From Oculina patagonica (Eukaryota), in the NCBI RefSeq assembly GCF_052425735.1, contig NC_135761.1:34844001-34908000 (forward strand): 64,000 bases of DNA, read 5' to 3'. The position numbers and the translations under genes are program-made. How positions within the stretch are numbered: position 1 is the first letter of the stretch; each line of letters begins with the position of its first letter. This document shows positions 1-64,000 of the stretch, piece by piece. The notes below the pieces were generated by a model, which was given only the letters and a program-made list of their open reading frames with translations, was not told the DNA's origin and did no database searches.

Positions 1-2
1 GT

Positions 3-734
3 AAACCAAAACCTACACCTTCTGAGCAGAAGTTTGAGTTTGGCAGTGAAAACCCTGTTGATCCAAAGCGATACCGTGAAGCAGTGGGTAGCTTGGTATA
101 TGCTATGACATGCACCAGACCAGACATATGCTGGGTTGTTACTAAACTGTCTCAGTTTCTAACTAATCCCACAAAGGAACACTGGGTAGCAGTGAAACAT
201 GTACTGCGGTACTTAAAGGGGACCCTTGACTTTGAACTGTGCTATAGGAAATGTGACAATGGTCTTACACTGATAGGCTATAGTGATGCTGATTGGGCAT
301 CATCTACAGATGACAGACGCAGCATCAGTGGGTACTGCTTCAGTTTGAATAAAGCTGGTCCACTTATCTCTTGGAAGTCGAGAAAGCAGCCAACAGTAGC
401 TCTTTCATCTTGTGAAGCTGAGTACATTGCCCTGGCAGCGGCAGTTCAGGAGGGCATGTATCTCATTCAGATAGTGAATGATGTTGGTGAGGTAAATGAT
501 CCTGTTTTGATCTTTGAGGATAATCAGGGGACAATTGCCTTGTCCATGAATCCAGTCAATCGACAGAGATCCAAACATATTGATGTGCGATACCATTTTA
601 TTCGCAATGTGCAGAATGCAGGCAAAGTAATCATTAAGTATTGTCCCACCGCCGATATGGTTGCTGATGTCATGACCAAACCAGTTACGAAGATTAAGTT
701 GCAAAAATTCAAGAGTTATATTTTTGGTTCTTAA
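3..734 (+). CDS. Ty1/copia pol C-terminus (end of RT plus RNase H), 5' end outside window
   Basis: Frame is open from base 3 (KPKPTPSEQ...YREAVGSLVYAMTCTRPDI). Copia motifs GYSDADWA, ISWKSRKQPTVALSSCEAEY, IFEDNQG, RSKHIDVRYHF and MVADVMTK. No stops. Confidence 0.95.
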   Translation, partial: KPKPTPSEQKFEFGSENPVDPKRYREAVGSLVYAMTCTRPDICWVVTKLSQFLTNPTKEHWVAVKHVLRYLKGTLDFELCYRKCDNGLTLIGYSDADWASSTDDRRSISGYCFSLNKAGPLISWKSRKQPTVALSSCEAEYIALAAAVQEGMYLIQIVNDVGEVNDPVLIFEDNQGTIALSMNPVNRQRSKHIDVRYHFIRNVQNAGKVIIKYCPTADMVADVMTKPVTKIKLQKFKSYIFGS

Positions 735-893
735 GACATTTGAGTTTTAATATAGAAGTAATGTACAAGAGTTCTATATTTTGTTATAGTTTTACTCATT
801 TGTCAACTGATAGTAAGCTATATGTTTATATTTTAGCAATATGACCGTGTTCATGTGATTTTAGAACACACATAGGAAGAGATCAAGTGGGGG

Positions 894-1014
894 TGTTAGG
901 ATGATCTCATTAATATGTATAAGATCTGACGTCAATAAAGTCCCGGATGTTGTTGTTCCTCGAAGTGAAAACATGGCGTGGCGTGTTTGATCTATTGATC
1001 CGAAAATCCGAACA
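894..1014 (+). mobile_element. 3' LTR of the copia element (~121 bp), preceded by a polypurine tract
   Basis: PPT-like AAGTGGGGG at 885-893 is directly followed by TGTTAGGAT (894). The end ATCCGAACA (1006-1014) is an 8/9 inverted match to the start. AATAAA lies inside. Confidence 0.75.
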
Positions 1015-1139
1015 ATCCTCCCCCCGTCATGAACGAAACAAATAATTGAAAATGCTGTGGATTATGGTATTGAAAGCAAAATTGTGTTTTACTTTCGATA
1101 TAACACGATTATCATTATATTTTTCTCTATTTCTATATA

Positions 1140-1916
1140 GGTACTGGGGAGTTTTTGCGGTGGCACCCTGAATTCATAGATTCTGAGGAAGAAGAAGTTG
1201 AAGTCAACTGCAACAAGGAAACAGGTGGCAGAAGAACACTGCACTGTTGTTCTAGAGGAATTTTTTTTATAGTCAGTGCTGGAGGCCATATAGAGTATTG
1301 GCAACCCTTATATCGGTAAATGCTATTGTGGTATTTTATACATGTTTATTGTAGAAAAGGGTATGCAATTATGTTGGAAGTCACCCTGGTTGGTTGGGTC
1401 ATACTTGATCTCTGCACATTTAAATGTTTTCCATGTATTTATTTCTGTTTGCAGGTCCGAATCTCCTACGCAAGCCTTTCTTGTTTGGTTATACAGGAAG
1501 CACAAGGCCCTCCAAGATGCAGGAAAATCCCCAACCGAAATAAAAAATTTTGGCCTATGACAACATGTGCCATGTGGATAGCCTGAAGATATCAAAGAAG
1601 GATCTCCCATTACCTAAACCATTTGACAAGTTATGGAGCACTGTTACCATAGTGATCAACAGGCTTCACCTTCGAAATCACAAAGATCCAAGATGTAAAC
1701 GCCTTTATGATGCAGCTGGAAAGATTCCATCTGAATTTAATACAATGTTCTGAATGGGCAAGTGGAATGAAAAAAATTGTCTGTGCTATGACAAGACTTC
1801 ACCAATTTTTCTTTGTCCATCGTTCTGTAAAACGACGAAACAAGTATACTGAAAGGAGGCATTTGAGAAATAAGAACCCAGTTTTACCCAAGTTGCCTCA
1901 AGTAGACAAAAAGTGA
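1140..1916 (+). pseudogene. Degenerate KDZ (Kyakuja-Dileera-Zisupton)-like transposase C-terminal fragment with an intron
   Basis: GHIEYWQPLYR|SESP is joined across GT..AG intron 1316-1454. AYDNMCH...INRLHLRNHKDPRC resembles the KDZ YDxxC / HxxxH..C motifs. Frameshifted. Confidence 0.55.
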
Positions 1917-2640
1917 TCATAGTGCACTTTTCATAATAAAGCAACTACCTTGATGTCATTTATTTGTGATTTTCTTGTAACCAAAATAATAATTAAATGC
2001 ATCAGCTGGAAGATTTAAATGTGTTTGTGATACCCTATATGTACTCAATGAGTTTAGGTGCCACGCATAAGTGTCTTTTCTGTCTCATACAATTAAGGCC
2101 AGCTTCTTGATAAATCTCTTTAGGTTTTTGAGAAAAAAAAAACAGGTTGCTGCGGCATTTTTTAATGGAGAAATGGAAAGCGAGTTGAGAGATCTAGGGA
2201 GCAAGATAAGATCGTGAGAAGGTAATGGTGGAAATCAACCAAATCAGAGCCAAGTCACTGTACGATCACCCATTTGATGTTAGGGTTTGGCTTATTTCTA
2301 GATGTACATATTAACACTATGAACTGGAGTTTTATGAAAATTCCATGAATTTCTTGTGGAAACCTCATGAAAACAGCCAAATGAAATTTCATGAAGTTTT
2401 TTGAAGCCATGAATTTTCTTTGAGTTACAGCGGGCTACATTTCATGACCCATGAATTTCTGTCAAAATACATTTGCATGAGCCATGAAAGCAGTCAAAAT
2501 TATAACCTATAGTTTTCATGGGTCATTAATTTTTCACGACACTCACCACAAATCAATTTCATGGCCTATGAATTGTAATCCTCGCCACGCAATGCATTGT
2601 AGGTAAATGTACCAAATTATCATACCTAAACAAGCAATAT

Positions 2641-3051
2641 TTTATTTTTATTTTTTTATTGCAAAACACACACAGAACGTTCTTACAAGGTGACATGTTC
2701 ACTATTAAACGAAAAATACCAAAATTACAGTCAGGAGTTGACATTAATACTCTTTATAAATTCTGACGCTGACTTATTTGAGCGTAAACAACGCTCATAA
2801 TGTACTCAAGATGTTTTGACCGAAAATCTGTATTTGTATTAGTCACTTGCGCGCGCATTCAAATGTGAAACCGTTAAAAAGCCGTTTTTTATGCCATGAT
2901 AACAACCGAAGAAGACCGAAGATTCTCGGTCGAAACGTCTTGAGTACATTATGAGCGTTGTTTACGCTCAAATAAGTCAGCGTCAGAATTTATAAAGAGT
3001 ATTAATGTTCACTACTAATTACTTACTACACAAGGCTTTAAACAAGCAATA
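2641..3051. mobile_element. Penelope-like fragment with an 83-bp inverted repeat and a hammerhead-like motif, nested in the CACTA element
   Basis: IR arms 2741-2823 and 2926-3008 have 2 mismatches. Flanking direct repeat TAAACAAGCAATAT at 2627-2640 and 3038-3051. Motif CCGAAGA-A-GACCGA/TCGGTC-GAAAC at 2906-2936. Confidence 0.6.
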
Positions 3052-3095
3052 TGGCGTTCAACCTGCGAGTCTACAGAAGCGAGCTCTGATAGTTT

Positions 3096-3330
3096 GTGAT
3101 GCCCTTTAGCCGTGCAGTTGCAGCCTGCAGTCATAAAAGTTGGAAAGTTAAGACTCTCAAATATTATACTTTCCCAAAAGAGGAACGTTTATGGAAAAAA
3201 TGGATAAGAGCACTGAGTTTAAGACGAAAGAATTACAGGTGGAAATCGAGCGACTGTATATGTAGTGTGCATTTTCGTGGAGGACACAAATATGGATCAA
3301 ACAATATAGCCTTCACATTTTTACAAGGAG
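3096..3330 (+). pseudogene. THAP DNA-binding domain fragment
   Basis: C...YYTFPKEERLWKKWIRAL...WKSSDCICSVHF matches the THAP C2CH signature (FP, W, CSxHF). Confidence 0.8.
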
Positions 3331-4399
3331 GAACCTTAAAAGTGGAAATGTTGTGTGGCCAGTGTATATTTCAAGTTTGCTGCAGGATAAATCAAATCCC
3401 ACTGGTGAGGACAAGAAAAAAATCAACCTTGACAGCGAGAATCATTTGCGGTAATAGTGCCACCTTTTCAGTAAATGCTGAGGATATTCCATTGAATGGC
3501 AAAACAGGTCTTGATAATGTAGTAGTACAGCAGGATCTAACAAGAATAACCAGACTGTGCCAAAAAAAGGCTGAGAATTTCCCACTGAAGAGCAAAACAG
3601 ATGATATCGAATCAATGGTGCAGCAGGGCTTAGATGCAAACGGAGACTGTTCATGCAAGCATGAAATCAGTAGACTACTGAACTCATTAAATTAAATGTC
3701 ATGAAAATCCTGGTGTTTAAATTCCTGGCGATTTGAATATCATTAAAAAGCCATGAAAATTTCACAGTGCACTCAATGAGTATTTAGTGGATTTTTCATG
3801 TGTATTTCATGGCCTTGAACACGGTTTGAAAGATTTCATGGGCCATGACACTGTAAAATTTCTCTAGATTTTCGTGACTATTTCATGGTAAATACCCCAT
3901 GAAAATACCCTTAATTTTTTACCATGAAAATCCTGTAAAAAAGGTTTCAAAATACCATTTCCTGCCGAAGAAATACTTAGATTTTGATGGGTTTTGAGTT
4001 CATAGTGTAAGTCAGTATCTGATCATTTTTAAAAGGCTGATCAGGGATTGTATTCATATTATTGTAATTTAAATTATGTATTAATGCAGGTTCCAGAAAA
4101 AAGTAGTAGTTTATGCTTAAGAGAGAACCATTAAAGCTAACTTATAAAAAAATGGAATTACTTTGATTTAAACAGTCGTGACTGTTTTACACAACCTGTA
4201 ACAAGCATTTGTCAATAGTAACTTGTTGTGGATGTATTTTCTATGTTTTAAAGGTTATGAGAGGCCTTGGGTAGTAAATGGGCAATGAAAATCGACATTT
4301 TCTCATTATATTATGAAGAGGAAGGTAGTTATACAATGTTAGTGATAAATTATCAGTACTATAATTTGGGAGCGAAATTGCTGCCGACTATATGCCTAA

Positions 4400-4830
4400 T
4401 GGCAAAACAATTTCTTAACTGTACACATCCTCTGCCTCAAACAGAGTATATTTCCGTTTTGGAAAAGGAAAAAGGAAACTGTTGCAAAAATGTAAAATGT
4501 CGTAAATAAGGTAATAAATAAACAACAATCTAGTATTCAAATGTTTTTCGTGCCAAATTTAATCCTTATTTTATCATTTTACCAAAGGATGTTGTTGAAG
4601 CGGGAGATCTCGAACCGTTTAAAATTTAGACTTAAATCATTTTTAAAACTTTAATCTTTTAAAAACCTTTCCTTAATGTTTTATATGATTAGCGTTGTAA
4701 TTTTTTATTCTTTTTTGTATATTTCTTGCTTTTTTCAGGGATGTTTTATCAAAAGGGATAACCTTGGAACTCTCCCCTTTCTAAATTTATGTATATTTGA
4801 ATACAAAATTTGGAATAAACATGTATGTTT
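4400..4830 (+). mobile_element. 5'-truncated LINE 3' end
   Basis: Degenerate DVVEAGDLEPFK..RL RT C-terminal-like text, then a T-rich 3' UTR ending AATAAACATGTATG. Confidence 0.45.
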
Positions 4831-6328
4831 GTTATTTCCAATTGTGATTAATTTTGTTAAACTGCTTATTTTGTTCTCTCCTTTCTTCACATTTTTCAGA
4901 GTGACAAATGTACAGGAAGTGTTAAATCTTGTTGAAAGGGCAGGAAGGGTCCAGCAAGATCAAATAGCACTGAGGTATATGACAACAAATAAACCTCCTG
5001 TACAAAGGCATTACAAGAAAGATTAAGGCATTTCTTTAAATGTCACATAATGAGAATAGAAAAAACCCTTTACGTTAAGAGGTGCCAAAAAAAAAAAAAA
5101 AAATTCCGTAAGCTTTCCAAGTAAATGAGATAAAACTGGTGTGCAAAACCATGGTAATACAAAATCGACTTTACTGTGAGGATAACTTAAGTCAGTTTGA
5201 CATTCTTAGGACCACTGGAAAACCAAAGAAGGAAACTAAAAGTGCTGATCCAGCAGTAGAATAGAAATGTTAGCTAAGACATCCAGACCACAGATGCTGT
5301 TTAACAGCAGCTTGCAGCCAAGGTCACACTGGCGTGCAGTGGCTGTTTGCGACCAAATCAACAATGCTAGTAGAATGGTTTGCCCGAAGAGGACTAGAAA
5401 GTGTGTTTGGGGACATGAATACCCTATTCGCCACAATGTTCTAAGGCTGGGTTTTGGCAGGCGAACTATAGCACAAAAGAATTTTAATGGCAGAGAGCTG
5501 TGAGGACCTCTGACAGTCGTTGGCTTATAAAGGGATATTGCAGTCAATGCTCCACCATTGTTATTTTTAGAGCAAGTAACAGGCACAGTTTCTGAGCCGC
5601 CAGACCCAAACATGCCAGAAACAAGCAAAGCCAGACATGATTCTACAATTCTAAAGGGCACATGATTATTTCCCATTCTCTGATTTCAAAAAACCTGGTT
5701 CCCTTTTTCCAAGATATTTTGCTACTAATTAGATAAAGGCATACAACAAACCAAATGGTATTTCTGACAGTGTGGCTTCGCATCTACTTCAAATTAGTAG
5801 AATGATTACAACTGGTGAAAAATAACCGTCATAATGGGTTGTCTCACTGCAACCTTTTCAGCTCAAATATGGATCAACAGAAAAAAGCTGATGTCTTAAA
5901 AGGAACAATGCCGAACAAGCCTGCTGCGAAGCGGACTAGAGATGTGAGAAGAAATGTAAGAAAACCTCTGGACTATTTGTCCGAAAATGTGCTACCTGTT
6001 GCTGTAGGGATTGTTAATTTGACAAGCGACCTCGTAGCAGTCCAGGGTACAAGGTAAATGTCTGCCTGTTATAATGTTATCTTTTTAACTCTGCTTCTTG
6101 TATCTTTGGCGATAAAAAGAAGTTGATCTTAGATCGTGTGTGGATGGTTTTCTAAGTAACAAAGTACACCTTTTGTCGTAAAACATGTCATTGCTTAATC
6201 AAATAAATATTGAAATAATTAGAAAAATGTTAGCTTATGCTTGTAACAATGAAGATAAGAATTATCTGGAGAATTTTGGGCGTACATTTGGGTTGAAACA
6301 TCCTGTGACGTACAGGAATGTGTGACAA

Positions 6329-6667
6329 TGTTCCGCAAATAGTGGGAGTGGGTTTAATTACAAAGGGTTAATTGGATTAGTCTAGGTAAACACGCAAGTC
6401 AAGTCATGCAACAGGAAAAATACAAATAAGTATTGTGAATCTTACATTTACGTAGTTAAGGTGTGTATTTCCGTTGTAATAGCAAATAAATAGAATCAAA
6501 CATCTTGTAATTAAGTAGATAGAACGATAGAATTGAATGTAGAACGTGTGCATCGTAAATAAATGCAAAATTCACGAAGGATACAGTCCTATTGATTGTC
6601 GTACCGGCGCAACACAGAGATTTTCCTTAATGAAGTGGAGAATTCTGCAAAACCTGGTCCTTCGAGG
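6329..6667 (+). mobile_element. BEL/Pao 5' LTR (left boundary approximate) plus primer-binding site
   Basis: TGGTCCTTCGAG at 6655-6666 is a typical BEL PBS immediately upstream of gag. TGTTCCGCA at 6329 loosely mirrors the end TGCAAAACC. Confidence 0.55.
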
Positions 6668-6687
6668 GCCAGATCAAAAGAAAGAGA

Positions 6688-7779
6688 ATGGCAGAAGTTT
6701 TGAAAAAAAAAAGGAAGGTTAGAGGAGGACATTGCGGCCATGTGACGAAACTGCTGGACACCGCACAGAGAATCCTTGAAGACTACGATAGAACAAGAAA
6801 GGACAGCCTCATGCAGACGAAAATTGCATTGACAGAAAAAATGGAAACGCTGAGGCACCTAGACGATACAATACTGGATCTGGTTAGTGCCGAAAAAGAT
6901 GGAGAAGCAACCATTGCTGCCGAGATTGATGAATTAGAGGAAATCAAGGCCGACATACGAGTAGTGGTCCTTGCGATCGAAGAAAAGTTAAGAGAAAACC
7001 TAGCCAATACAGCACCGCCGACAAGCCAAACCGTGCCAAGTCCACCACTGAAGACTGAAAAAGCAAAGGCACGACCGCCCAAATTAGAGGTGAAGAAGTT
7101 TACCGGGAGATTTCATGAGTGGCAAGAGTTCTGGGACTCATACTGAAGTGCAATTCACTCGAATGACTCTTTGAGTGATGTAGACAAGTTCTCCTTTTTT
7201 CGAGGATTGGTCGAGGGACCTGCCAAAGCGTGCATCGCTGGTTTTGCCCTAACCGAGGCAAATTACAACGCCCCCATCAAACTGTTGGAAAGAAGGTTTG
7301 GAAAAAAGATCGCAATCGAAAGAGCCCACATTAGCGAATTGTTGAACGTACAGCCAGTGTACGGAGACAGAGAACCGCGGCGATTACGAACTCATATCGG
7401 AATTGATGAAAGGATGTATTCGGGCATTGTTGTACCGTGAATACTTGGAAAGCTCCCAGACACCCTTAGACTGACCATCACCAGAGGAGAGGAGTACCTT
7501 GAATGGTCTCTGGGAAACTTGCTGGGCGCACTGTTGAAAGAAGTGGAGCTGAAGGAGGACTACAGCCTCACACCACAAGTAAACCTTCCCCCAGAGGGAA
7601 ACAGGCGAAAAGGTCTACCGCCAACGAGCTCGTTTTTCACAAACAATCAAAAGAAGAGGTCAGAAGGTCGATGTGCGTTTTGTCTGGTAAACCACCCCCA
7701 TAAGGAATGCAAAGGAATCACGAACATTGAGGTACGTAAGCTGTTAGTTCGTAGATACGGTAGATGTTTTATGTTCTAA
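6688..7779 (+). pseudogene. BEL/Pao gag (DUF1759-like domain and zinc knuckle), disrupted and 3'-truncated
   Basis: KLEVKKFTG..EWQEFWDSY*SAIH..LSDVDKFSFFRGLVEGPAK..I.GF.LTEANY..AIKLL.RRFG and CAFCLVNHPHKEC. Contains stops and frameshifts, and no pol follows. Confidence 0.9.
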
Positions 7780-8581
7780 TTTGCCACAACCCGCTGCAAA
7801 CTAAATGATTCCTAGGGATCTGATTGCACCTCATCGTGCATCAAAGGAAACAGATTGACAGTTTTCTCACCTTTTGGCCAATGTGATTCACTTTCCTCAG
7901 GCAAAGCAGAAATGAAAATTTACAGAGATCAAAGCAGGTTCACTTTACTGGTGCCTCTCCACCAGTCCTCTGCCCGCCTTATCTCTTCCCTTGCTTAGTT
8001 TATGTTTAGTTTAACAATCGTGTTTAATAAAATACATCCAAAACAGTGGTAGAAATCAAAACTTACAGAAGAGTTTGTGAGCAAATAGAAACCCTCATGT
8101 TACTTGAAAAGTGAGGAGACGAGAATATCCAGCTTAAGATCAAACTATGCACAAGAAAAAAGCCTATATTGACAAAGTGGACAAGCTTCTGTCGGACAAG
8201 CCCTGTATCAAACCAAAGGTTATCATAAAATCCACAACAACATTTTAAATCATGTATTTTATGTGAATAGTGTAAAACAATGAAAATCTGAAATCTGAAC
8301 GTTGAACTGAATGTAAACACCCTTAGCAGCAGCAAAGAAAAGTCAGAAAACCTTGACAGACTTCTCAATTGTGCGACTGTGGTGACAAGTAAGAGTTAAA
8401 TAATGCTCTCCAATTGGAGGGCCAGACAAAGAAGTTGTTTCCAACAGCAACATCTCTTTTTGGCAAAACTTCTTTATATTAGAGCACCAGCAATCTGTTA
8501 TTTACACGTAGACTTTCTTGCCATGTTGTGAGTAAATATAGATTTGTCAATTTTTCTGTTCTGTTCCTTTATTATTTCACC

Positions 8582-8775
8582 ATGCGCTCAGTTGAGGAGG
8601 CAATCAGGTATAGCTTATGGAAAGCAAATTACAATGATGCCCGAGAACAACAGCAGAAAGTTATTCATGCTTACTGCAGTGGAAAAGATGTGTTTGTGTT
8701 TCAGCACCTATGGGATTGGGAAGGAGCCTGACATTGGAAGTAGCTCCATACGCTTTAAATTATTTACAGCATCGT
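8582..8775 (+). pseudogene. RecQ-like SF2 helicase N-terminal fragment (TE-borne, AcademH-like)
   Basis: AREQQQKVIHAYCSGKDVFVF then, after a frameshift, APMGLGRSL: a degenerate Q-motif and motif I. Confidence 0.6.
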
Positions 8776-9462
8776 GAAAGAGAAGAGGTCTCTTGTCCCT
8801 ATGCATTTCTGTTACACTGGGACAAAAACATGGGAATGAAGGCCAGTGAATTACAAAAAAGATCAATAAATAAGTAGTTAAACAAGAGAATTTTCATTGC
8901 TTCCCAACATGGTGTTACCATAGAAACTCCAGTACCCTGAAAAGTTAAATTAGCTGTTATTATAAGCTTAACAGCAAGTAGTAAGTCAGATCAAAAAGAA
9001 TATGAGCATTTTGTTTAAGTATATAACACTGAAAAAGTACTTGTTTTATTGCACATGTACAAGAATGGTATCCATATTTATTAAGTAAATTATTTATGCA
9101 GGTGCCCCACTGAAAACCACTTTTAGAATTAATTTTATTAATTAATTTTAAGTAATTATTGTTATTATTATTACTATTTTTAAATATTTTGCTGCTTCAT
9201 AGTCCCAAAAACAAATAAAACAGTAAAAGCTAAAAAGGCAGGTCATCCAAGGTCAATTCCACTCATGACAATGAATCCCCAGTGTGTGAACAAATCCAAA
9301 AAAGAGTGGAAAAAAAATCAGATGAAACATTTTGCAAAAGATTGACTGATTCTGACTTTGTAAACATTACTTCATGTTGACAGTAACATGAAAGAGCACT
9401 GCTCAGCTCTCATCAAAGGATGAGGAGGGACTGCATGCTGTCCATTTTGTGTATCACATGGT

Positions 9463-10152: not shown

Positions 10153-10463
10153 CAAATGGAGCTCTCCCCTCCTTCAAAGAGGATGAAGTATGGAGTGTCT
10201 TCCTCCCCATTATCCCCTGCATTGCCGTCTAAAACAGGTGAGTAGCATCAGGTAGAAAAACTAGACAACATATTTTGTATGCAGGTGATGTGAAAAATTC
10301 CTGGCATCCATAATGGATTGTTATAGCAACTGTTGACACAACACAATTTACGAGCAGTTCACAATGAAAATTTTCAATCAACTCCCCAAATCTATTTTCT
10401 AAAACCTAAGCATGTTTTCATGTTCTCCATTGACATTTTAACGCATCTTTTCTTATCTCAACA

Positions 10464-11070: not shown

Positions 11071-11072
11071 CA

Positions 11073-53700: not shown

Positions 53701-53712
53701 ATTAATTTTTTT

Positions 53713-54988
53713 TTAAGAAAAAATAAGTGGTGTGGGGAGTCGACTGCGGGCCGCTGGCATGACGCGCCTCGTCTTATATCCATAGTTTTTTGGACCAGCT
53801 GCTGCAAATTCTACAATGTAATCTTGAGGGTCGAGCTCATTGGTAAAATCTCCCAAAAAGTCTCCAAGAGGAAGGGCAGGGTCCGCAGGTCCTCGCCTGT
53901 AAATCAAAGAATCGGTATCAAAGTATAAAATTTGATGCGGGCGAAGACGAGCCAATCCTTCTTGGTAGAGTTTCAAGCGGGTGTAACACGTGGTAAAGCA
54001 AGCCACGAAGATGTTGACGTTGGGTTGAACCTGTTCACACTCGTCTCGATGTTTATGGACCACTTCCAACATGTCAGGATTCACGACGCGTATGTTGCTG
54101 ATGGTGACGCTTTCGTCGCACAACAAATTGTAAAAGTCAGCGGGAGAGGTAAAGGCTTCCATCTGAGGCTTGTTTCCCTGCTGACCATACTTGCCCACTA
54201 TTCAGCATCATCTTGGCAAGGGACCTTTTACCAGGATTCTTTTCAATTTTGTCAGGGTCGAGTCGTATGCCTTCTTTTCGCTCGTAATCATCGAGGTACT
54301 GCTGCCGTTTCTCCTCATCGTCACCCACCCAGTCAGGCCAACCACTGGCTTCCTGTTTCAACTTCAGAAACGTATCCACGTACGGCTTAAACAGCTCATT
54401 AGATCGGCGCTCAAAATGCCACACTTCGTGGACGTGTTCAATCGTATAACCCTGACGGACGGCTTCTTCCAATTCGGGGGTACACCAGGTCCCAGTCAAT
54501 TGGCGTTGTTCTCGGGTGTGAGAGCAGGTCATGGACCGGTCGGTCAAGGGTTTAGGTTGCTCCGTTTTGACACAAGTGCGACAGAGGGGAAAGGTCAGCT
54601 TGTTTCCATGACGGTACGAGAGGACAGGACTGTACAACTGATATGGCGGATTGACGGTACATTTTGCCAATCCAAAGTACTGACTGAGGTCCGTGTGTCC
54701 CGGTTCCAAAATTACTTTAGGGTGTCCTTCAGGATACGTGCAATTCTTATTGACCCAAGGGTACAAGGACGTAAAATCCACGTAATGAATCTCTTCATCC
54801 TCATGGGTCTGGTGGTACAATTTAATGGCATTGGTTCGACCTCCAAAAAAAGCGTCTCTAGGTTCCAGATTTGTGGCATGATATCTCTTTGACAAGAGAA
54901 ACCAGGCTGTAGTTCTGTCTCTGCATTGTTTATCATGCTCTTGGCATACTGGGACTGAAGCATCGCCCAAATAATCTCGGGACATCAC
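53713..54988 (-). pseudogene. Protein-primed family B DNA polymerase of a Maverick/Polinton (or adintovirus-like) element, partial with one frameshift
   Basis: PRDAFFGGRTNA, YVDFTSLYP, TGTWCTPEL, LKLKQEASGWP, RSLAKMMLNS/(W)GKYGQ, LYFDTDSLIY, LGDFLGDFTNEL and AGPKNYGY. Frameshift at ~54195. Confidence 0.92.
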
Positions 54989-55717
54989 CCAAACGGATTA
55001 CGATCTTGACGTAGGGTTCCCCCTCAGGTGGGGGATCTGTCACCCGAGCTTTTCTTGCTTCTCTTATCTAAGAAACGAACAAATCAAATTTTCAAATTTA
55101 ATATAAGTATTATTAATTTTAATAAGTATTGAAATGCATTTTACACCTCCAATACAATTACATTCATTTTTTGGTATGAAGCCTGAATTTAAAATTTATG
55201 GTAAAACATTGACTTTCTTGTTTGATAGCAGTGTGGATAATTCTCTGTTGATGTTGACTAGCTCTAGCTTTGAGCAGTGCACCTTTATTGCAATTTATTG
55301 TTTCTAATAATTCATTAACTGGTTTCATTTATGCACATTATTCTTCAGAAGTATATTGTTTGATTAATTATACCTTCCTTAGTTCGTCCCTCTTGTTTTC
55401 CTTCTTCTTCTTTCTCACCCTGCTCTCTCATCTCAGCAAAGGACTGATAGTAAATACAATGCATAAGTGATTGTAAGTCTTTTCTATTCAGAAAACACTT
55501 ACAATTCAATTACATTCAATTTTTGGTATCCAGCTTGCATTTTAAATTTATAGTTTAAACAATTCTCTGTTGGTGATGACTAGCTCCAGCTTTAATTAAG
55601 CAATGCACTTTCATTGTAAGTTATTTTTTTAAAAAATTCATTAACAAGTTTCATTTATCCGCATTATTCTCCAGAAGTATATTTTTTAATTATTCCTTCC
55701 TTACATCGTCCCTTTCA

Positions 55718-56682
<965 letters not shown>

Positions 56683-57326
56683 GCTGAATTCACGGAACAG
56701 ACCAAAGAACGCGAAAACTATACAGTGCTGGCTTACTATTATCATAAATTTTACACTCTGAGGGGCACAAATATGGCCGACATCCATATTTGGAAAATCT
56801 TGTGGCGTCACGTGAAAACCAAGAATAGGGATTTGAAAATTACACTCCTTAATAGAAAATTGAAAATTTAACTCCTAAGTAGAAAATTGAAAATGTTAGT
56901 CCTAAATAGAATCATCTCATACTTTCTGCAAGTTTTGAAAATTTTTATTTTTTTTATTTTTCACTCACTGTTAAGAATTACACTTGATTCAGTGCTAAAT
57001 TTGATGTGTTGAGCAGCATCACATCAGAAGTGATGGTCAGAACGAAATGCTGGCCACTCGGTATTTCTTGAAATACCATTCTTCAGATCCATTGAAGCTA
57101 AACCCACAAACTCCACCACGGCCCTTTCCTCTTCAAACGACCACTTGTGTAATTGCACAGGTAATTTTACAAGTACTGATAATGGTGACTTCCTTACTTC
57201 AGTGCTAACAACCTAGAAAGGAAACATTAGGAGAAACTATTACTACTTTCAAGGTCATTAATTATCTTTACTCTTTGAATAAACAAATTTAATGACTATC
57301 TAGAATAAAAATCAGCGAAAATAAAT

Positions 57327-57360
57327 GACGTTTCGATGAATCGCGGTTCATCATTATCAA
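57327..57360 (-). ncRNA. Hammerhead-ribozyme-like motif in a Penelope pLTR
   Basis: Minus strand reads TTGATAA-T-GATGAA-ccgcga-TTCATC-GAAAC-GTC: a variant CUGANGA core, stem II and GAAA. It lies just 3' of the GIY-YIG ORF. Confidence 0.5.
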
Positions 57361-57469
57361 ATTCTAAAAAAGTCAGATTCTGATGAGTTCAATATATATT
57401 AAGAGTGCGTGTGAAAATCTCGTTGCATAAAATTAAAGACTATACAATGTGAATTGTATTGTATAGTGT

Positions 57470-57815
57470 TCTTCAAGATTGTAAATTGCTTGTTAAGATC
57501 TTTGTTACTCTGGTTGTGGGCATCACGCAGGTGGTTTCCAATAGCTGAGTGCTTATGTTCATCAATGCGTTGGAAAAGGTGTCGGCGAGTGTAGCCTACA
57601 TAATCCGCATCACACGAATCACATTTAAATTTGTAAACAACACATTGTTGATTTATAAGCGGCGGTTTGGCCTCTGCTACATTGATGTCGTCGGCAATTT
57701 TCTTGCTTGTGAAAACTGGGCGTAGATCGCTGTTTATTTTCTTGCCAAGATCTGACAGCTGTCTTCGTACAACGTCTGCTGATCTTTGGTCTTTGAATGG
57801 CAGAATAATCCGAAA
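57470..57815 (-). pseudogene. Penelope-like GIY-YIG endonuclease fragment
   Basis: ILPFKDQRSA...CVVYKFKCDSCDADYVGYTRRHLFQRIDEHKHSAIGNHL. Confidence 0.9.
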
Positions 57816-58269
57816 GGTCCTAGACCACCTAAGGCACTTGTGAGATCCATCAACCAACTGAAGAAACGAGACGGATATCGTAATCACGAAACCGGACAAA
57901 GGGACAGGTGTCGTCGTCATGAACTGTGACTTTTTTTAGCCCTTCGACAATTCCTTATTGCATTTTGTTGACTAGTCCTGAACATGAAATTTTATACTTT
58001 CTCGTTGTTTTTTAGTCTAATAATTTTGTGTGCCTTTGGAATATGTTCAAAGATGATCAACGATCTTCACAAACAAATCTGTAAATGCAGCCTAATAATT
58101 CCCTCTGTTTTTGGGTGCAACAATGATGCACCTTCTTTGTATACTCTCTTCTCTACTTTATCATACGCGCTGAACGTTCTTTTCTCCTCTTTCATAAACG
58201 TCAGCCATTTCTGCTTTTCCTCCTTTCCTAACATCATCATTATTCACACACTTCTCTACCATACTTCGT

Positions 58270-58550
58270 AGACCGTTGAAGTCAACGGCAGCATTATTCA
58301 GTTTGACCATCTCTGGGAGTTCAGGGGAAAGATTGTCAAAGAGTATGATGGGCTCCTACTCCTCACCAACCCACTGACTTGTACTCCACGCCTTGAAATG
58401 GAGAACAGCCTTTCCAACGTTGTTTTTCACAATGACAAAACTGTGGAAGCTGTTTAGGCCATAGATGGGTTTCATGTAAGGAAGAAGCCACTCCTGTACT
58501 GCGTACAGGTGCGGAAGAGTCACGTACTGGGTCTTGGCTCCTTCCTGCAT
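58270..58550 (-). pseudogene. DUF7869-family transposase C-terminal fragment
   Basis: LYAVQEWLLPYMKPIYGLNSFHSFVI...GKAVLHFKAWSTSQW. Confidence 0.5.
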
Positions 58551-58629
58551 TGTCTCTTCACTGGTTAAGGCATTTAAGGATCTTTTCCTCTTTTAATGAT
58601 ACATGCTCCACCAGCTTCTTAAAATGGCC

Positions 58630-58860
58630 TCCGTGAATAACAGCTCTCTTCGAAATGAGCTGAACATAAGGACGCGTATTTGCTAGGTTCAGCGAAGTCT
58701 CTGCGGTGTTGCTGCACAAACTTAATCCATTTTTTCTCTCAAATCCCGATTAGAAGGGAATTGGTGCATTGTGACACCCGGAGTAAACGTGTTGCGGCAA
58801 CTCTCGCTGTTCTGGGCGCCTACGACGCAGTATCTCCCCCCCCTCTCCCCCTTCCTGTTG
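58630..58860 (-). pseudogene. THAP domain fragment
   Basis: GGRYCVVGAQNSESCRNTFTPGVTMHQFPSNRDLREK then, after a frameshift, WIKFVQQHRRDF...LCSAHFEESCY. Confidence 0.75.
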
Positions 58861-59184
58861 ACATTCACTTCAATTCGTGTGTCACTTCTTGTTGTGGTGG
58901 TGTCCATAAAGGGAAGTCCCTGCTCTGTGGTGTCCTCAGTGTCTTCTTTTGCAGTAACTTTTTCCCGTAGTCTTTGTGACTTTTATCCCATAGGAGTCTG
59001 TTATCTTTATTTTAGTACATATATACATAAAAATTTACACTGTAAGCATAGTATTTTTTTGGAAAAGAAAATTTTGTCTCGAATAAGGGCCTTCCCTTGA
59101 AATGCTTAAAGTAAATAAGCGCCCCGGGTGTGAAATCAAATCAGTATGGTACATGGGACCATCAACACCCTAAATTATTTAACA

Positions 59185-59895
59185 ATAATTATTCAATACA
59201 GTGGAGGCGAATAGTGGTGGATATTTACCAAGCCGCAAAATGGTAAGGTAAATATCCACCACATTCACCGGCACTGAGGTGAAAATTTGTTTTAGTATAT
59301 ACAAGTTAAATAACTAGCTGACAAAAACATCACTTTTCATGCACACCAATTGGTTAGTTAGTACTATTCACTTCCGGGAAGCTAAAGAAAAACAAACTGC
59401 CTTTGAGTGTTGCTTTGTTTACCGCAAGTTTTTGCCTGCCAGTTATTCAACTTGTGTTGTATAATAAAACAGATATTCATTGTTGGTGAATGTGGTGCAA
59501 AGCAGCTTGGTAAATACTCACTACTATTCACCTTCACTTCGGTGAACAACTTGTAATTGGTATATACCACACAAGTAAATAGTGCTTTTCGCACATGCTG
59601 ATTGGTTAACTCTTTGGTGATTAGCAAAGTTCTATTCACCTCCGAGCAAGTAAAGAGAAATTAACTGCCTTTGCGTGTCACTTTGCACAGAAAAAGCACT
59701 ATTTACTCACTACTGTTCATCTTCACTTTGGTGAATAACATGTAATTGGTATATACCACACAAGTAAATAGTGCTTTTCGCACGTGCTGATTGGTTAACT
59801 CTTTGGTGATTAGCAAAGTTCTATTCACCTCCAAGCAGGTAAAGAGAAATAAACTGCCTTTGCGTGTCGCTTTGCACAGAAAAAGCACTATTTAC
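59185..59895. repeat. Palindromic non-autonomous repeat with an internal ~190-bp tandem duplication
   Basis: Hairpin GGTGGATATTTACC...GGTAAATATCCACC. The segment TATATACCACACAAGTAAATAGTGC...GCACAGAAAAAGCACTATTTAC occurs twice. Confidence 0.7.
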
Positions 59896-59925
59896 TTGCC
59901 AAAGTAGTTTTCGGCATCAGTTTCT

Positions 59926-60165
59926 TTAAAGCACTTGGTAGTTTGGTCCAGTCGTTAATGGCCATTCCATTCTTGGCCTACTGACTTTGGGCATATAGCC
60001 ATTTCGGGTATTATAACCGTGTTGTTGGTTCATGGTGGTTCTGAATACACCGAAATGTTCGGGAATGCTACCTTTCATTGCATATTGCACAACACAACAC
60101 CGATGACCCAACCGCCTCACATGTAAAGACACCCACCGCAATGATGTCAGAGCCTCTGCTGACGA
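59926..60165 (-). mobile_element. LINE RT C-terminal fragment
   Basis: LRWVSLHVRRLGHRC...HGYNTRN...PRMEW. Confidence 0.6.
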
Positions 60166-60169
60166 CAAT

Positions 60170-60805
60170 TTGGACTTGAAGGCCCAGGTTTGTTTTTGTT
60201 GTCAACTTGGTAAGTTTGACTTTTCTTTAACTGCTTCTCTCCTTTCCAGTTCTGAATTTTGTCAGGTTTATGCTTGAGATTATCATAAAAGCTCAATAAA
60301 GCATTGTCATTTGGAAAGTTAGTGTAAAACAAAATGGCTGCATTATCGTCTTTAATTTTGTCCAAAGAAAACTGATGATCCAACAAGACTGTTTTTTTTT
60401 TCTTTTTCCAGCTGCACTATTTTATCTTTATACCGCGAGTTTTGCCTTTCTAACAGTTCAATCCTTTCTAGCAGAGATTGCACTGTGTCAATTTCAGGAT
60501 CAACTGGTGTCATTTCTGGTGGGGTGGTTTCACTTGTAACAGATTCCAGTGGAGCTTGTCCATCACATTCTGATAGGCCTGCTGCCATATAGAGCTCAGT
60601 TTCAGCTGCTTTATTTTTTTCCATGATGTTGGGGTGGGCTCTCTTTTACTTGGAGGAAAATATGGATAGTTCTGCACCTGAAGATAACATACCAGACTCC
60701 TTAGATAAATGAAAAATGCCATTATAATAATAAAATGTCATTTGTCCTCTGAATATTGAACTACCTGTTGCATCCAGGACAAACTGTGCTGATCAAATAC
60801 CCTAA
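60170..60805 (-). pseudogene. Second copy of the ISL2EU-type transposase N-terminal region (paralog of 30650-31245)
   Basis: VDPEIDTVQSLLERIELLERQNS...DDNAAILFYTNFPN...KGEK. Confidence 0.75.
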
Positions 60806-60875
60806 CAGGGTATGTCTGTCCAAGTTTAATGGGATGATTGCTGAATAAATGTGCAGTTTCGGTGGCATTAATGTA

Positions 60876-61373
60876 TCAATGTGGCAAGGACCAACAGGCT
60901 TTATCATACAAGGCATTTCCAAGACGCATGCACAAGTAAAAAAGCTTACTCCAATCTGAGTGCAGGTGGCTTCCAAGTAGAAGCGAAATGTCGAAGGTTA
61001 GGATTGTGTGAGCGACTGCCAGAGAAATCAGGCTACAGGCATTGCTTCCATTGCGACCATCGATACTTAACTGGCAAAACTCTGCAGGGAACATCCAACT
61101 GTACATGTCACCATCGACCAAGGAAATGGGTTTAACTTCTCTGGAAGGTTCTTGCACGGTATTTTCACCCAGTTCTGCCCCAATGTCATCCCACTCTAAT
61201 TCACTCGAGTCAGACTCCTCATCACCATCTCCAAAATGTTGATCGTTGCTGTCAGAGAATTCGAACTCACTAAAGTCACCTTTTGTAGCTGCTTTAACAT
61301 CAAAGCGCTTTTGGGCAATTTGGGCCTTAGCAAAGTCCAAACCTTTTAGTGCTAACGTGATCTTTCCGCACAC
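60876..61373 (-). pseudogene. 'GRNGSNAC' motif protein fragment, longest copy
   Basis: SWMFPAEFCQLSIDGRNGSNACSLISLAVAH...LGNALYD. Confidence 0.5.
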
Positions 61374-62929
61374 AGCAAAGGAATCAGTACCTTCATAGCA
61401 ATATCGGCCATTCTGAAAATGGAGCCAGAAATCATCCTGTTTGTCTTTAGTTAGTCAATCTGTCTTTTATGCAACAATTCACATTTAAATATATTTTTAT
61501 GTTCATATGAATATGGACTGGAAAAAATTAAATCTAACATTGGAAGATACGCACACCTACCGAGCTACCTTCAGAGGAGGAAAGTGACAAATGTGAACTC
61601 ATAATCATACAATGTGTTCTTGTTTTACTTTTGTTGTTTTTTCTATTTGACCTCATTTTCTTCAAAAAGACACCAAGGTCCTTTCCTATTGAGGAAGCAA
61701 ATTTCATATTGACAATACCTGTAAAATCAAAACAACATACCAAAAGTAACATTAGTTTTTTTAAAACTGTAATGGTATTTCAGGCATTAGATAACATTAA
61801 ATTCATAATAGAAAAAGCATACTACCAACACCAAAAGAAGTTGAAAACATTAACTGAGATGATAAATAGTGTAATAACGATAACACAAAAAAGGACTGTC
61901 CTGTTTTGGCTATATGCAGGTCTTGTCTCATAACTTCATTTTAACATTCAAACATCATTTTATTAATATTCTTGTTGTAAAGCGTATGGGCAATTAGGGG
62001 GGGAAAATTATTAACACTGGCAGCCAGTGACCCATGGCCTGCACATGTCTTCAGCTGTAACAGCAGCTGAGCATGATTTTCTGTTTTTTCTTCAGATTAG
62101 ACGGTTCTCTTTCGACAAATTGTAACATTGCTATAAGCACCATCCCCAGTACAAGACCCTTGGTCCCAGATCTGTATAAATGAACTGCCTGAGCTCCTCT
62201 GCTAAAATGTCTAATATGCTGGGTTTCTCTTGTGAAGATATAGAAAATATTTCCAAGGGGAACACTTGTTACTCATGCCGACTAATGTTCAGCCATTCTG
62301 TAAGGAGTGATTCGCTAACAGTAATGATGATGAGGAGGACGACGATGACAACAACAACGTGTTTTGGCAGAAATACATGCAATTGCCAGTGTTTGCTGTA
62401 TTATTGCACCTTATCCGATTCAATATTCCAAATCTATTGCCAGCCTTTTGAGGTACTGGTACTTGAGTTTCAGTTTTACTAAGGTTAACAGCAGTGGAAC
62501 TGGAAGTTTGAGATTCAGTCATTTTGCAGAACTGCTGGACACGCACACTTGCTTCCAGTGAAGTAACCTTTTGCTTTACAATAATGGATCTTATAGTAAA
62601 GTATTTTACTAAGCTTAAAAATTCCTTTCTGGAACATTCGCATTGATCGTAGTCGTTGTCGCGCTCGTTGTCAGTATGAGGCTCCGCGGAATAAACTATA
62701 GAGTTTGTGGGGTTTATTCTCCAGACGCACGTAGTGATGTCTATTATTTTAGGCTGAATTTTAAAATATCAAAAATTGGGCTATTATAATCTGTGACTTG
62801 CCATAACGTTCCTAGAGCATTTGAATGGCGGCATCGTAATTCGAGCTTGAGTGTAAGACCTTGTATGCTCCTCATGGCGTTTCCTTAGAGTAGAAAACTT
62901 AGATAACTGAACTTGTCGATTGTTGAGAT

Positions 62930-63665
62930 TCAGATTTTTATTATTTCACACTATTTACAAATAAATTTCACCATCACACACTATTTACAGAAAATTTTTT
63001 AATTAAAATAAGGAAAATATAACAATAATAAAGCCAAAATAAAATGTGCTCAGTGACCAAAGAAGCATATGCTATCGTGTTGGTCACTGACACATTAAAA
63101 AAAGACAAGACATATCGATTAATAGAGACAATAGAAAAAAGGAAGTTAAATGTGAATAACAAAAGTTAAATGAATAAATCATAATTAAGCTATATACATA
63201 ATACAGAGAAATTATGCTGGAAGAGTATTTTGGGTATTTAAAAGGTATAGTTTATATTGCTTATAAAAGGAAGTGTAAGGCAGCTTTTTTAAATCTGTTG
63301 GAATAGTTTCCCAAAGTTTTGATGTAACAAAAGAGAAAGTAGTGGACCCATAGTTATTTACTCTTGGCATATGAAAATTCAAGTTAGCAGCAAATCTTGT
63401 ATTGTAGGTGATGTATATAATATTCTTATGTGGACGAGGGAGGAAACTTTCGCCAGGAAAAATGAACTGAGTAAGAGTTCTATGGAATATTGCTGGAATG
63501 TTTGTTGAGTTGTTTAAATTTTATGAGTAAAAAGAGCCACTTTAAATTTGTACACATTTTCAAATTTGAGAATTCCTAAAAGATTGTAATATGGTGAAGC
63601 ATTTTCCCTGCTTTAAGCAAAGAATATGCTTCGGACACAATTATTCTGCTTAGTTATGATTAACA
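62930..63665 (-). mobile_element. 5'-truncated CR1-like LINE
   Basis: KQNNCVRSIFF...SPYYNLLGILKF...YNTRFAANLNFHMPRVNNYG...KLWETIP, with an AT-rich 3' UTR to the left. Confidence 0.75.
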
Positions 63666-63807
63666 GTTATGTTAAAAATGAGAAAAGTATGTCATCATGA
63701 ATGAGAACTACAAAGTAAAAAAAATGGTGGGTTGAAGACTGGTGGGCATGGAGGAGGATTGTGAATAGAAACAGTGCTAAAAGAAACAATAAATAACGAT
63801 TTACTTA

Positions 63808-63960
63808 CTGAATTTATTACTTCAAAAAGAACATTGATGGTCAAGTTACTGCCATGGGGCCATTCGCACATATCCAGAAATTCGAATGCTCTGGTGTGGA
63901 GGTTGTTTAAGACACCTGTTACATGGGTTTTCAAGCGCCACGCGCTTCCATCGGTCTACA
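63808..63960 (-). pseudogene. DUF7869-family (Sola-like) transposase core exon
   Basis: LKTHVTGVLNN...FEFLDMCEWPHGSNLTINVLFE, bounded by AG/GT splice sites. Confidence 0.55.
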
Positions 63961-64000
63961 GAGGTAAAAGTGAAGTAAACGATTAATGTGAGAACCTGAA

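What the first reader, a model, noticed from the sequence alone, without database searches (positions are those of the whole stretch)
1..64000. TE fragments are strand-polarised in two opposite arms: candidate bidirectional, TE-antisense piRNA cluster
Seen: every coding TE fragment I can orient at 1-12.2 kb is on + (copia, KDZ, THAP, two LINE tails, BEL gag, RecQ, Pif1, RPA). About 25 fragments from unrelated classes at 18.2-64 kb are on - (SAP, CxC5, RecQ, PLE, ALS2CR8, CXC, DDE_Tnp_4, DUF7869, hAT, THAP, DIRS, SWIM, TRAF, RPA, pPolB, GIY-YIG, LINEs). The only exceptions I noticed are two short LINE tails (~25.9 kb and ~43.0 kb). Independent insertions from more than 10 superfamilies should orient at random, and local duplication does not explain the bias. 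Established: unistrand piRNA clusters such as Drosophila flamenco accumulate antisense TE fragments, and cnidarians have PIWI/piRNA pathways. Inference: divergent transcription from ~13-17 kb would read all fragments antisense, making this a two-armed TE-memory locus.
Basis: partly seen in the sequence, partly recalled or inferred. Interest (0 to 1): 0.9.

Follow-up and report, generated by a model that had tools for sequence, protein, structure and literature searches.

The report
Two-armed, strand-polarised transposon graveyard in a coral
In the coral Oculina patagonica, transposon remnants on both sides of a small promoter-like module all point towards it, and the pattern recurs at three sister loci; this is the layout expected of a two-armed piRNA source, but the small-RNA libraries I could check gave almost no reads at its centre.

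Summary
Among stop-free ORFs of the window, every convincing Pfam match to a transposon protein lies on + left of about 12 kb. Every one lies on - right of about 18 kb (12 families against 0). This holds after collapsing the many local direct duplications. The polarity extends over at least 104 kb.

The switch sits on a 1.3-kb module (14316-15575). It carries outward-facing splice donors on both strands and short non-coding exons. The module has exactly three paralogs, all on the same chromosome. At each, independent transposon content shows the same polarity: 54 to 15 long ORFs (p=3e-6) and 7 to 0 Pfam matches. The best change-point falls on the module at all four loci.

This supports divergent transcription running antisense through the transposons. 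It rules out chance, misassembly and simple duplication.

The piRNA reading itself is unproven. Two small-RNA libraries gave one read each over 12.9-18.9 kb, and a polyA library gave none on the module. Short-read mapping and the tissue sampled are caveats.

I put a bidirectional, flamenco-like piRNA precursor locus at about 0.4. Long non-coding or host transcription units that purge sense insertions stand at about 0.3.

The scan's first stage flagged similar co-oriented clusters elsewhere in this genome. One of them (s1-293979) contains a paralog of the module.

The parts
1..12200 (+). Left arm. Transposon coding remnants all lie on +, pointing towards the module. They include the copia pol C-terminus at 3-731, THAP at 3093-3692, a BEL/Pao gag domain (DUF1759) and a Pif1-like helicase at 9424-10149. 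The arm continues at least 20 kb to the left of the window, with an intact copia and a BEL/Pao pol.
   Evidence: ORF polarity
4633..5648 (.). Ancestral segment shared only with paralog c1 (C4:33802345-33804274) at 71-78% identity. It evolves neutrally: substitutions show no codon-position bias and indels are not multiples of 3. This shows that the loci are old segmental duplicates.
12675..13100 (.). High-copy MITE-like element of about 425 bp with internal inverted repeats. Genomic copies occur in both orientations.
14316..15575 (.). Central module at the polarity switch, read as a putative bidirectional promoter with first exons. It is a four-copy family confined to chromosome C4. CpG observed/expected is about 0.9-1.1 here, against about 0.4-0.6 in the arms.
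14475..14629 (.). Young MITE of about 155 bp with terminal inverted repeats, flanked by an 8-bp target-site duplication (GAAATTTG, at 14467-14474 and again at the element's far edge, about 14627-14634). Many genomic copies are 96-99% identical. It is absent from the three paralogous modules.
14815..14937 (-). Putative first exon of the leftward transcript. It ends at a CAG|GTAAGAG donor: the last exon base is 14815 and the intron runs down from 14814. The donor is conserved in 3 of 4 copies. There is no open frame through to the donor. The upstream limit of the exon (the start site) is not known.
   Evidence: direct reading of the sequence
14335..14464 (-). Candidate second exon of the leftward transcript, with acceptor ...AAATTTCAG| and donor CAG|GTGAA when read on the - strand. 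It is conserved in c1 (86%) and c4 (73%). This is inference only.
15033..15064 (+). End of the putative first exon of the rightward transcript, with the donor CTG|GTGAGTGA (intron starts at 15065). GT is kept in all 4 copies. The ATG at 15033 opens only a 15-codon frame once spliced to exon 2, and the ATG is lost in c3, so the exon is non-coding.
15332..15402 (+). Putative exon 2 of the rightward transcript, with acceptor TTGCAG| and donor CAG|GTTAGA. AG and GT are kept in all 4 copies. Indels between copies are not multiples of 3.
15470..15575 (.). Block of about 105 nt that is 89-95% identical in c1, c2 and c3, more than the rest of the module. In c1 and c3 it lies 2-4 kb further downstream. 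Its role is unknown.
18200..64000 (-). Right arm. Transposon coding remnants all lie on -, pointing towards the module. They are SAP, RecQ-type helicase, CXC, Harbinger-type HTH+DDE, ALS2CR8, DUF7869, CxC5, pPolB and a YqaJ-associated family. The arm continues at least 20 kb to the right of the window, where there is a gypsy-like pol of at least 1322 aa on -.
24579..36115 (-). Tandem (direct) duplication of a mosaic block of about 6.7 kb. Segments 24579-25584, 26228-27626 and 27628-29045 match 31267-32220, 32220-33569 and 34675-36082 at 88-92%.
38821..42316 (-). Direct duplicate pair: 38821-40258 matches 40883-42316 at 93%. It belongs to the same repeat family as 27.6-29.0 kb and 34.7-36.1 kb.
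54140..54997 (-). Remnant of a protein-primed B-family DNA polymerase (Polinton/Maverick type), E=2e-18. Genomic copies elsewhere are 91-93% identical.
55693..56874 (-). The longest ORF in the window (394 aa). It belongs to a widespread metazoan repeat family whose longer members carry a YqaJ recombinase domain. NCBI annotates it as a hypothetical protein of Oculina patagonica.

Best explanation
The window is one of four paralogous loci on chromosome C4 of Oculina patagonica. At each, a roughly 1.3-kb module acts as a bidirectional promoter. It launches two spliced, non-coding transcripts in opposite directions.

Each transcript runs for at least 35-70 kb through a dense graveyard of transposon remnants, nearly all of them antisense to it. 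I read the two arms as piRNA precursors. That makes the locus two flamenco-like uni-strand clusters placed back to back, so processing would yield transposon-antisense guides.

The polarity would be maintained in two ways. Antisense insertions are retained because they confer silencing. Sense insertions are lost because their polyadenylation signals truncate the precursor.

Shown: the polarity, its replication at the paralogs, the position of the switch, and the splice-site-like motifs. Inferred: the transcription itself and the processing into piRNAs.
For: Strand polarity of Pfam-supported transposon remnants:
- 12 to 0 inside the window.
- About 20 to 1 once the flanks and paralogs are added.

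Long ORFs of 120 aa or more, with antisense shadows removed and duplicates collapsed:
- 83 towards the module against 25 away (p=2e-8).
- 54 against 15 (p=2.6e-6) at the three paralogs alone.

Position of the switch: the best polarity change-point contains the module at 4 of 4 loci.

Repeats shared between loci: same-side pairs are direct and opposite-arm pairs are inverted, 29 conforming against 1 exception.

The module:
- Outward-facing donors sit on both strands, and a small internal exon has AG and GT conserved in 4 of 4 copies.
- Its CpG observed/expected is about 1, against depleted arms.

Young and old insertions obey the same rule: the young ones are an intact copia, a BEL/Pao and a gypsy-like pol.

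The only host-gene fragment found, a TDRD1-like MYND+Tudor ORF in paralog c4, lies in the harmless sense orientation.

Arm fragments are 91-99% identical to copies elsewhere in the genome.

From the literature:
- Uni-strand clusters are the majority class in the cnidarian Nematostella, 402 of 457 (PMC5731801).
- Flamenco-like clusters are defined by a discrete promoter, splicing, and transposons antisense to transcription (PMC10643416).
Against: - Two size-fractionated ncRNA libraries of the same species label (6.9 M reads each) laid one read each on 12900-18899.
- A polyA library laid none on 14.7-15.7 kb.
- Contigs of run X1 cover 15.3-15.7 and 16.4-18.9 kb, but not the presumed first exons. 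Whether X1 is RNA is only a guess.
- The module is no more conserved (79%) than a neutrally evolving ancestral piece of the left arm (71-78%), so purifying selection on it is not demonstrated.
- In paralog c4, 32 kb of '-'-polarised sequence lies between the two halves of the module. A simple two-start-site model does not predict this.
- Other co-oriented clusters flagged in this genome lack the module.
Confidence: 0.4

Rival explanations
1. The module drives two divergent long transcripts that are not piRNA precursors. They could be long non-coding RNAs, or 5' non-coding exons of protein-coding genes whose coding exons lie beyond the 104 kb examined. Polarity arises only from purifying selection against sense-oriented transposons, whose polyadenylation and splice signals would truncate the transcript.
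For: - The structural evidence is the same as for the main reading.
- Almost no small-RNA reads mapped at the centre.
- Low-depth unspliced contigs cover 16.4-18.9 kb in run X1.
- Low CpG observed/expected in the arms fits germline gene-body methylation of transcribed DNA (inference).
Against: - No coding exon or conserved frame was found on the 'away' strands in 329 kb.
- The first exons are non-coding.
- The bias of about 90% or more across all transposon classes, in arms almost entirely made of transposon debris, is stronger than the modest antisense bias known for introns (my own knowledge).
- Transcription units of over 100 kb are unusual for a coral.
- No polyA reads fell on the module.
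Confidence: 0.3
2. The arms are not transcribed from the module. The polarity reflects a non-transcriptional asymmetry centred on it, for example replication-fork direction from an origin, or a chromatin boundary that biases insertion or retention. Alternatively it is inheritance from an ancestral polarised segment, amplified by direct tandem duplication.
For: - The loci are old segmental duplicates, and a little arm sequence is shared.
- Tandem direct duplications are frequent in the arms.
- No RNA support was found at the module.
- The module's divergence is about neutral.
Against: - Over 90% of arm content is not shared between loci yet follows the same polarity. This includes very young insertions.
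- The bias covers LTR elements, DNA transposons, Helitron-type helicases and Polinton polymerases alike. These do not share an insertion mechanism.
- Known replication-linked insertion biases are weak (my own knowledge).
- Splice-site motifs face outward on both sides of the module.
Confidence: 0.15
3. Chance or artefact: selective reading by the first reader, duplicated blocks counted several times, or a misassembled join of two unrelated regions.
For:
- Local duplications are extensive.
Against: - An unbiased two-strand Pfam scan gives 12 to 0.
- Collapsed ORF statistics give p=2e-8, and the pattern is replicated at three other loci.
- The window has no gaps.
- The same module configuration exists four times.
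Confidence: 0.03

Closest known systems
Drosophila flamenco and flamenco-like uni-strand piRNA clusters (PMC10643416)
   Same: A discrete promoter and spliced first exons, with arms of tens to hundreds of kb of nested or truncated transposon remnants. Almost all remnants are antisense to the inferred direction of transcription. Exceptions tend to lie far from the promoter: here the one sense element found is about 58 kb out.
   Different: - There are two arms back to back from one module, not one.
- The bias covers all transposon classes, whereas in flamenco-like clusters it is driven by Gypsy elements only.
- Four paralogous copies exist on one chromosome.
- No piRNA production has been shown.
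- The host is a cnidarian, with no follicle-cell context.
Bidirectional (divergently transcribed) pachytene piRNA clusters of mammals and birds
   Same: A central bidirectional promoter with the two arms read outward on opposite strands. piRNAs would therefore switch strand at the centre.
   Different: Those clusters are transposon-poor and show no antisense transposon bias (my own knowledge). Their promoters are A-MYB bound, and no such motif was tested here.
Uni-strand piRNA clusters of the sea anemone Nematostella vectensis (PMC5731801) and proTRAC clusters of reef corals (PMC13343488)
   Same: They belong to the same phylum. Most Nematostella clusters (402 of 457) are transcribed from one strand. 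Genes nearest to coral clusters are enriched for Pif1-like 'DNA unwinding' and 'DNA integration' terms, the kinds of transposon ORFs seen here.
   Different: Those clusters were defined from small-RNA reads and this locus from DNA anatomy alone. The reported coral clusters had lower-than-expected transposon density. Neither a conserved promoter module nor transposon orientation was described.
Antisense bias of transposons inside long introns of host genes
   Same: Orientation is biased relative to a transcription unit. The cause is selection against sense polyadenylation and splice signals.
   Different: The intron bias is usually modest. Here it is near-total, no host coding exon was found, and the first exons are non-coding.

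Membership tests
Uni-strand (flamenco-like) piRNA cluster | Abundant 23-32 nt, 1U-biased small RNAs arising from one genomic strand of the locus | tested here: inconclusive
   one read per library (2 libraries of 6.9 M reads each) over 12900-18899, both on + at 18.7-18.9 kb. The reads were 75 nt and untrimmed, the mapper's sensitivity below about 30 nt is unknown, the tissue is unknown, and only 6 kb could be laid.
Uni-strand (flamenco-like) piRNA cluster | Transposon fragments dense and predominantly antisense to the direction of cluster transcription | tested here: met
   Relative to the inferred outward direction: Pfam 12 to 0 in the window, and long ORFs 83 to 25 after collapsing.
Uni-strand (flamenco-like) piRNA cluster | Discrete Pol II promoter and a spliced precursor transcript | tested here: inconclusive
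   At the sequence level only: there are outward donors on both strands, a small exon with conserved AG and GT, and a CpG-normal module. No RNA reads fell on the presumed first exons.
Uni-strand (flamenco-like) piRNA cluster | Large size (tens to hundreds of kb) | tested here: met
   The polarised domain spans at least 104 kb, from 35 kb left of the module to 69 kb right of it. Its ends were not reached.
Uni-strand (flamenco-like) piRNA cluster | PIWI loading of its products, and derepression of the matching transposons when the locus or pathway is lost | not testable with these tools
   This needs PIWI immunoprecipitation and genetics.
Bidirectional piRNA cluster (mammalian pachytene type) | Central bidirectional promoter with piRNA strand switching at it | tested here: inconclusive
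   A promoter-like module lies at the switch of transposon polarity. A strand switch of small RNAs could not be assessed, with only 2 reads.
Dual-strand piRNA cluster (Drosophila germline type) | Transposons in both orientations, no discrete promoter, and piRNAs from both strands throughout | tested here: not met
   Each arm has a strong single-strand orientation.
Introns of two divergent protein-coding genes | Coding exons with conserved frames on the 'away' strands, joined by splicing to the module exons | tested here: not met
   - The 'away' ORFs gave no Pfam or homology support.
- The shared ancestral piece shows no codon-position bias.
- The first exons are non-coding.
- Exons shorter than 60 aa, or lying beyond the 104 kb examined, cannot be excluded.

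The most novel reading that the evidence does not exclude
The 1.3-kb bidirectional module is a portable 'cluster seed'. Old segmental duplication spread it to four sites within 4.5 Mb of chromosome C4. At each site it has since imposed antisense capture of every transposon class on both sides.

On this reading the four loci are natural replicates. They would show that a promoter alone is enough to create and maintain a two-armed, flamenco-like transposon trap in a non-bilaterian animal.
Probability: 0.25. Interest if true: 0.7.

Novelty: new member of a known kind. Interest (0 to 1): 0.5.

Why it matters
How piRNA clusters are specified and how they evolve is still open, and almost all mechanistic knowledge comes from flies and mice.

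If these arms make piRNAs, a coral would have flamenco-style, orientation-selected transposon traps. They would be arranged as divergent pairs and present as four old paralogs whose arm content has almost wholly turned over (shared sequence is limited to a few short ancestral pieces). That offers a ready natural experiment on promoter-driven cluster birth and on selection for insertion orientation.

If they do not make piRNAs, the near-total antisense bias over more than 100 kb around a non-coding bidirectional promoter would itself need an explanation.

Tried and rejected
- Inverted duplication of the two arms: rejected. There is no left-right arm homology, and all long internal repeats are direct.
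- Assembly gap or join: there are no Ns, and the same configuration occurs at four loci.
- Module as promoter of the TDRD1-like gene seen in paralog c4: rejected. That ORF is a 96% partial copy of a gene on C2:11.94 Mb and has no counterpart at the other loci.
- Module as a general promoter of all co-oriented clusters in this genome: rejected. Only four copies exist.
- Conserved coding exon in the shared c1/c2 left-arm piece: rejected. There is no codon-position bias, and the indels are not multiples of 3.
- Rfam: no family match anywhere in the window.
- Public gene calls around the 394-aa ORF: not on record.
I did not try to get round this.
- Literature: no paper on Oculina piRNAs is in the library.
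- RNA: only one read-laying run was allowed. I spent it on the centre, so the arms themselves were not examined for small RNAs.

Full report
**Source and anatomy.** The window is C4:34844001-34908000 of a 529-Mb assembly. A 100%-identical NCBI protein on a contig of the same length identifies the species as the coral Oculina patagonica. The window has 38% G+C and no N runs. CpG observed/expected is about 0.2-0.6 over most of the window but 0.9-1.3 at 12-16 kb.

**Checking the observation.** The tools do not translate through stops, so I extracted all stop-free ORFs of 60 aa or more on both strands (313 ORFs). I then scanned them against Pfam, singly or in strand-specific groups.

- Left arm, + strand:
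  - THAP (3093-3692);
  - a Pif1-like helicase end (9424-10149);
  - DUF1759, the BEL/Pao gag domain;
  - ORF 3-731, the tail of a 1347-aa copia polyprotein (gag, protease, integrase, RVT_2) that begins in the left flank.
- Left arm, - strand: no match.
- Right arm, - strand:
  - SAP (18219-18872);
  - Helicase_C with the RecQ zinc-binding domain (24846-25412, and its duplicate);
  - CXC (29878-30258);
  - HTH_Tnp_4 plus DDE_Tnp_4 (30156-30707);
  - protein-primed DNA polymerase B (54140-54997);
  - ALS2CR8, DUF7869 and CxC5.
- Right arm, + strand: 100 ORFs scanned, with only chance-level matches at E between 0.003 and 0.01.

That is 12 families against 0. As a spot check, the longest unexplained + ORF (171 aa) has no homolog among 5.8 billion proteins. 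The longest - ORF (394 aa) has 216 homologs, from a metazoan repeat family whose longer members carry a YqaJ domain.

**Duplications.** The right arm contains several direct duplications at 88-95% identity: 24.6-29.5 kb with 31.3-36.1 kb, 38.8-40.3 with 40.9-42.3, 21.4-22.5 with 22.8-24.0, and 51.2-52.0 with 54.9-55.7. The bias survives collapsing them. No inverted homology links the two arms.

**The switch region.** Between the arms lie two MITEs: 12675-13100, and a young one at 14475-14629 with an 8-bp target-site duplication. There is also a 1.3-kb unique module at 14316-15575. The module carries:

- a donor on the - strand (CAG|GTAAGAG, last exon base 14815);
- a donor on the + strand (CTG|GTGAGTGA, last exon base 15064);
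- a small + exon at 15332-15402, bounded by TTGCAG| and CAG|GTTAGA.

The short frames in these exons close at once: ATG 15033 gives 15 codons after splicing. The exons are therefore non-coding.

**Paralogs give replicates.** The module has exactly three paralogs, all on C4:

- c1 at 33.785-33.788 Mb, inverted;
- c3 at 37.4835-37.4885 Mb;
- c4 at 38.2747-38.2751 plus 38.3072-38.3078 Mb, split by 32 kb at window position 14937/8.

The GT of the + donor and the AG and GT of the small exon are kept in 4 of 4 copies. The - donor is kept in 3 of 4.

I fetched 60-104 kb around each copy and oriented it by the module.

- **Long ORFs.** For ORFs of 120 aa or more, I removed antisense shadows and collapsed duplicates within each arm. 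They point towards the module 83 to 25 overall (p=2e-8), and 54 to 15 at the three paralogs alone (p=2.6e-6).
- **Change-point.** The best change-point interval contains the module at all four loci. It is unique at c1 and c2, and one of two or three tied optima at c3 and c4. The best-split score beats shuffled strand orders only at c1 and c2 (p=0.0008 each); it is marginal at c4 (p=0.04) and not significant at c3 (p=0.15).
- **Pfam at the paralogs.** The 'towards' ORFs give hAT, PIF1 (twice), Merlin-type DDE, piggyBac-type DDE and pPolB.
- **'Away' ORFs.** Ten 'away' ORFs, eight from the paralogs and two from this locus's right flank, gave one transposon match. It is a GIY-YIG ORF 58 kb to the right of the module of this locus, outside the window.
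- **Shared repeats.** Repeats shared between loci are direct when on the same side and inverted when on opposite sides, 29 conforming against 1 exception.
- **Independent content.** Arm content is otherwise unrelated between loci, so these are largely independent insertions.
- **Young insertions.** An intact copia, a BEL/Pao pol and a gypsy-like pol of at least 1322 aa obey the same rule.

**Age and constraint.** One left-arm piece (window 4633-5648) has its only real homolog in c1, at 71-78% identity. It shows no codon-position bias. The loci are therefore old segmental duplicates. The module's 79% identity is about the neutral level, so I cannot claim purifying selection on the module as a whole. 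The retention of the splice dinucleotides is only mild evidence.

**RNA evidence.** The run search offered three size-fractionated ncRNA runs and three polyA runs as raw reads, all sharing the species label of the best-matching runs.

- The two small-RNA libraries (6.9 M reads each) laid one read each. Both were on + at 18.7-18.9 kb, which is the predicted strand, but the number is negligible.
- The polyA library laid reads only on repeats and none on 14.7-15.7 kb.
- Contigs of run X1 cover 15.3-15.7 kb and 16.4-18.9 kb at low depth. They do not cover 14.7-15.3 kb. Whether X1 is RNA is only a guess.

This is a weak negative for an active piRNA source. The reads were 75 nt with adapters, the shortest laid matches were 30-34 nt, the tissue and stage are unknown, and cluster expression in Nematostella is stage-specific (PMC5731801).

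**Interpretation.** Chance, selective reading, misassembly, inversion and simple duplication are excluded. The force that keeps insertions of every class pointing at the module is most simply outward transcription from it. This force has acted on both old and very recent insertions, at four loci.

Whether the transcripts are piRNA precursors is not shown.

- For: the anatomy matches the definition of flamenco-like clusters, namely a discrete promoter, splicing, and antisense transposons with sense exceptions far from the promoter (PMC10643416).
- For: uni-strand clusters dominate in Nematostella (PMC5731801).
- For: the only host-gene fragment found lies in the harmless sense orientation. It is a TDRD1-like MYND+Tudor ORF in c4, a 96% copy of part of a gene on C2.
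- Against: small-RNA reads are nearly absent, and the 32-kb polarised stretch between the module halves in c4 is unexplained.

I put the piRNA reading at about 0.4. Non-piRNA long transcription units stand at about 0.3, non-transcriptional asymmetry at about 0.15 and artefact at about 0.03.

**Comparison and novelty.** If it is a piRNA source, this is a new member of a known kind. It has three unusual features: two arms from one module, a bias covering all transposon classes rather than Gypsy only, and four paralogous copies.

The first stage of this scan flagged at least seven other co-oriented transposon clusters in the same genome. One of them (s1-293979) contains paralog c1. The others lack the module.

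Noticed in passing
L027:8294-9562 (+) = C4:38333294-38334562, right arm of paralog c4: A 423-aa open frame with zf-MYND and Tudor domains (TDRD1-like, a piRNA-pathway protein type). It is 96% identical to part of a multi-Tudor gene at C2:11936023-11942136 (-). It is a recent partial copy that sits in the sense ('away') orientation inside, or at the edge of, a transposon-polarised arm.
   Followed up: partly
window 14475-14629: A young MITE of about 155 bp with terminal inverted repeats and an 8-bp target-site duplication (GAAATTTG), which is hAT-like. Dozens of genomic copies are 96-99% identical. It is inserted right beside the candidate acceptor of the leftward transcript.
   Followed up: partly
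window 12675-13100: A MITE-like element of about 425 bp with internal inverted repeats. There are more than 40 copies at 86-96% identity on many chromosomes, and tandem sub-repeats of it at C3:13.58 Mb.
   Followed up: no
L005:6691-10000 plus window 1-731 (C4:34840691-34844731, +): An uninterrupted 1347-aa copia-type polyprotein frame (gag, zinc knuckle, protease, integrase, RVT_2). It is probably a recent insertion and is oriented towards the module.
   Followed up: partly
C4:38285000-38299000 (L023-L024), between the two halves of the module in paralog c4: A tandem array of a 5.7-kb unit with at least 3 copies: ORFs of 164 aa on - and 122 aa on + recur with that period. The 32 kb that split the module there are themselves '-'-polarised, which the simple two-promoter model does not explain.
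   Followed up: no
window 57295-57817: A short element with many genomic copies at 98-99% identity in both orientations. It is a very recently active family sitting inside the right arm.
   Followed up: no
window 15470-15575: A block of about 105 nt that is 89-95% identical among three of the four loci, clearly above the 73-79% of the surrounding module. In c1 and c3 it lies 2-4 kb further from the module. No Rfam match and no long open frame.
   Followed up: partly
window 55693-56874 (-): NCBI annotates this transposon-family ORF as the protein-coding gene ACROYT_G014634 of Oculina patagonica. Transposon remnants in these arms are therefore probably counted as genes in the public annotation.
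   Followed up: no
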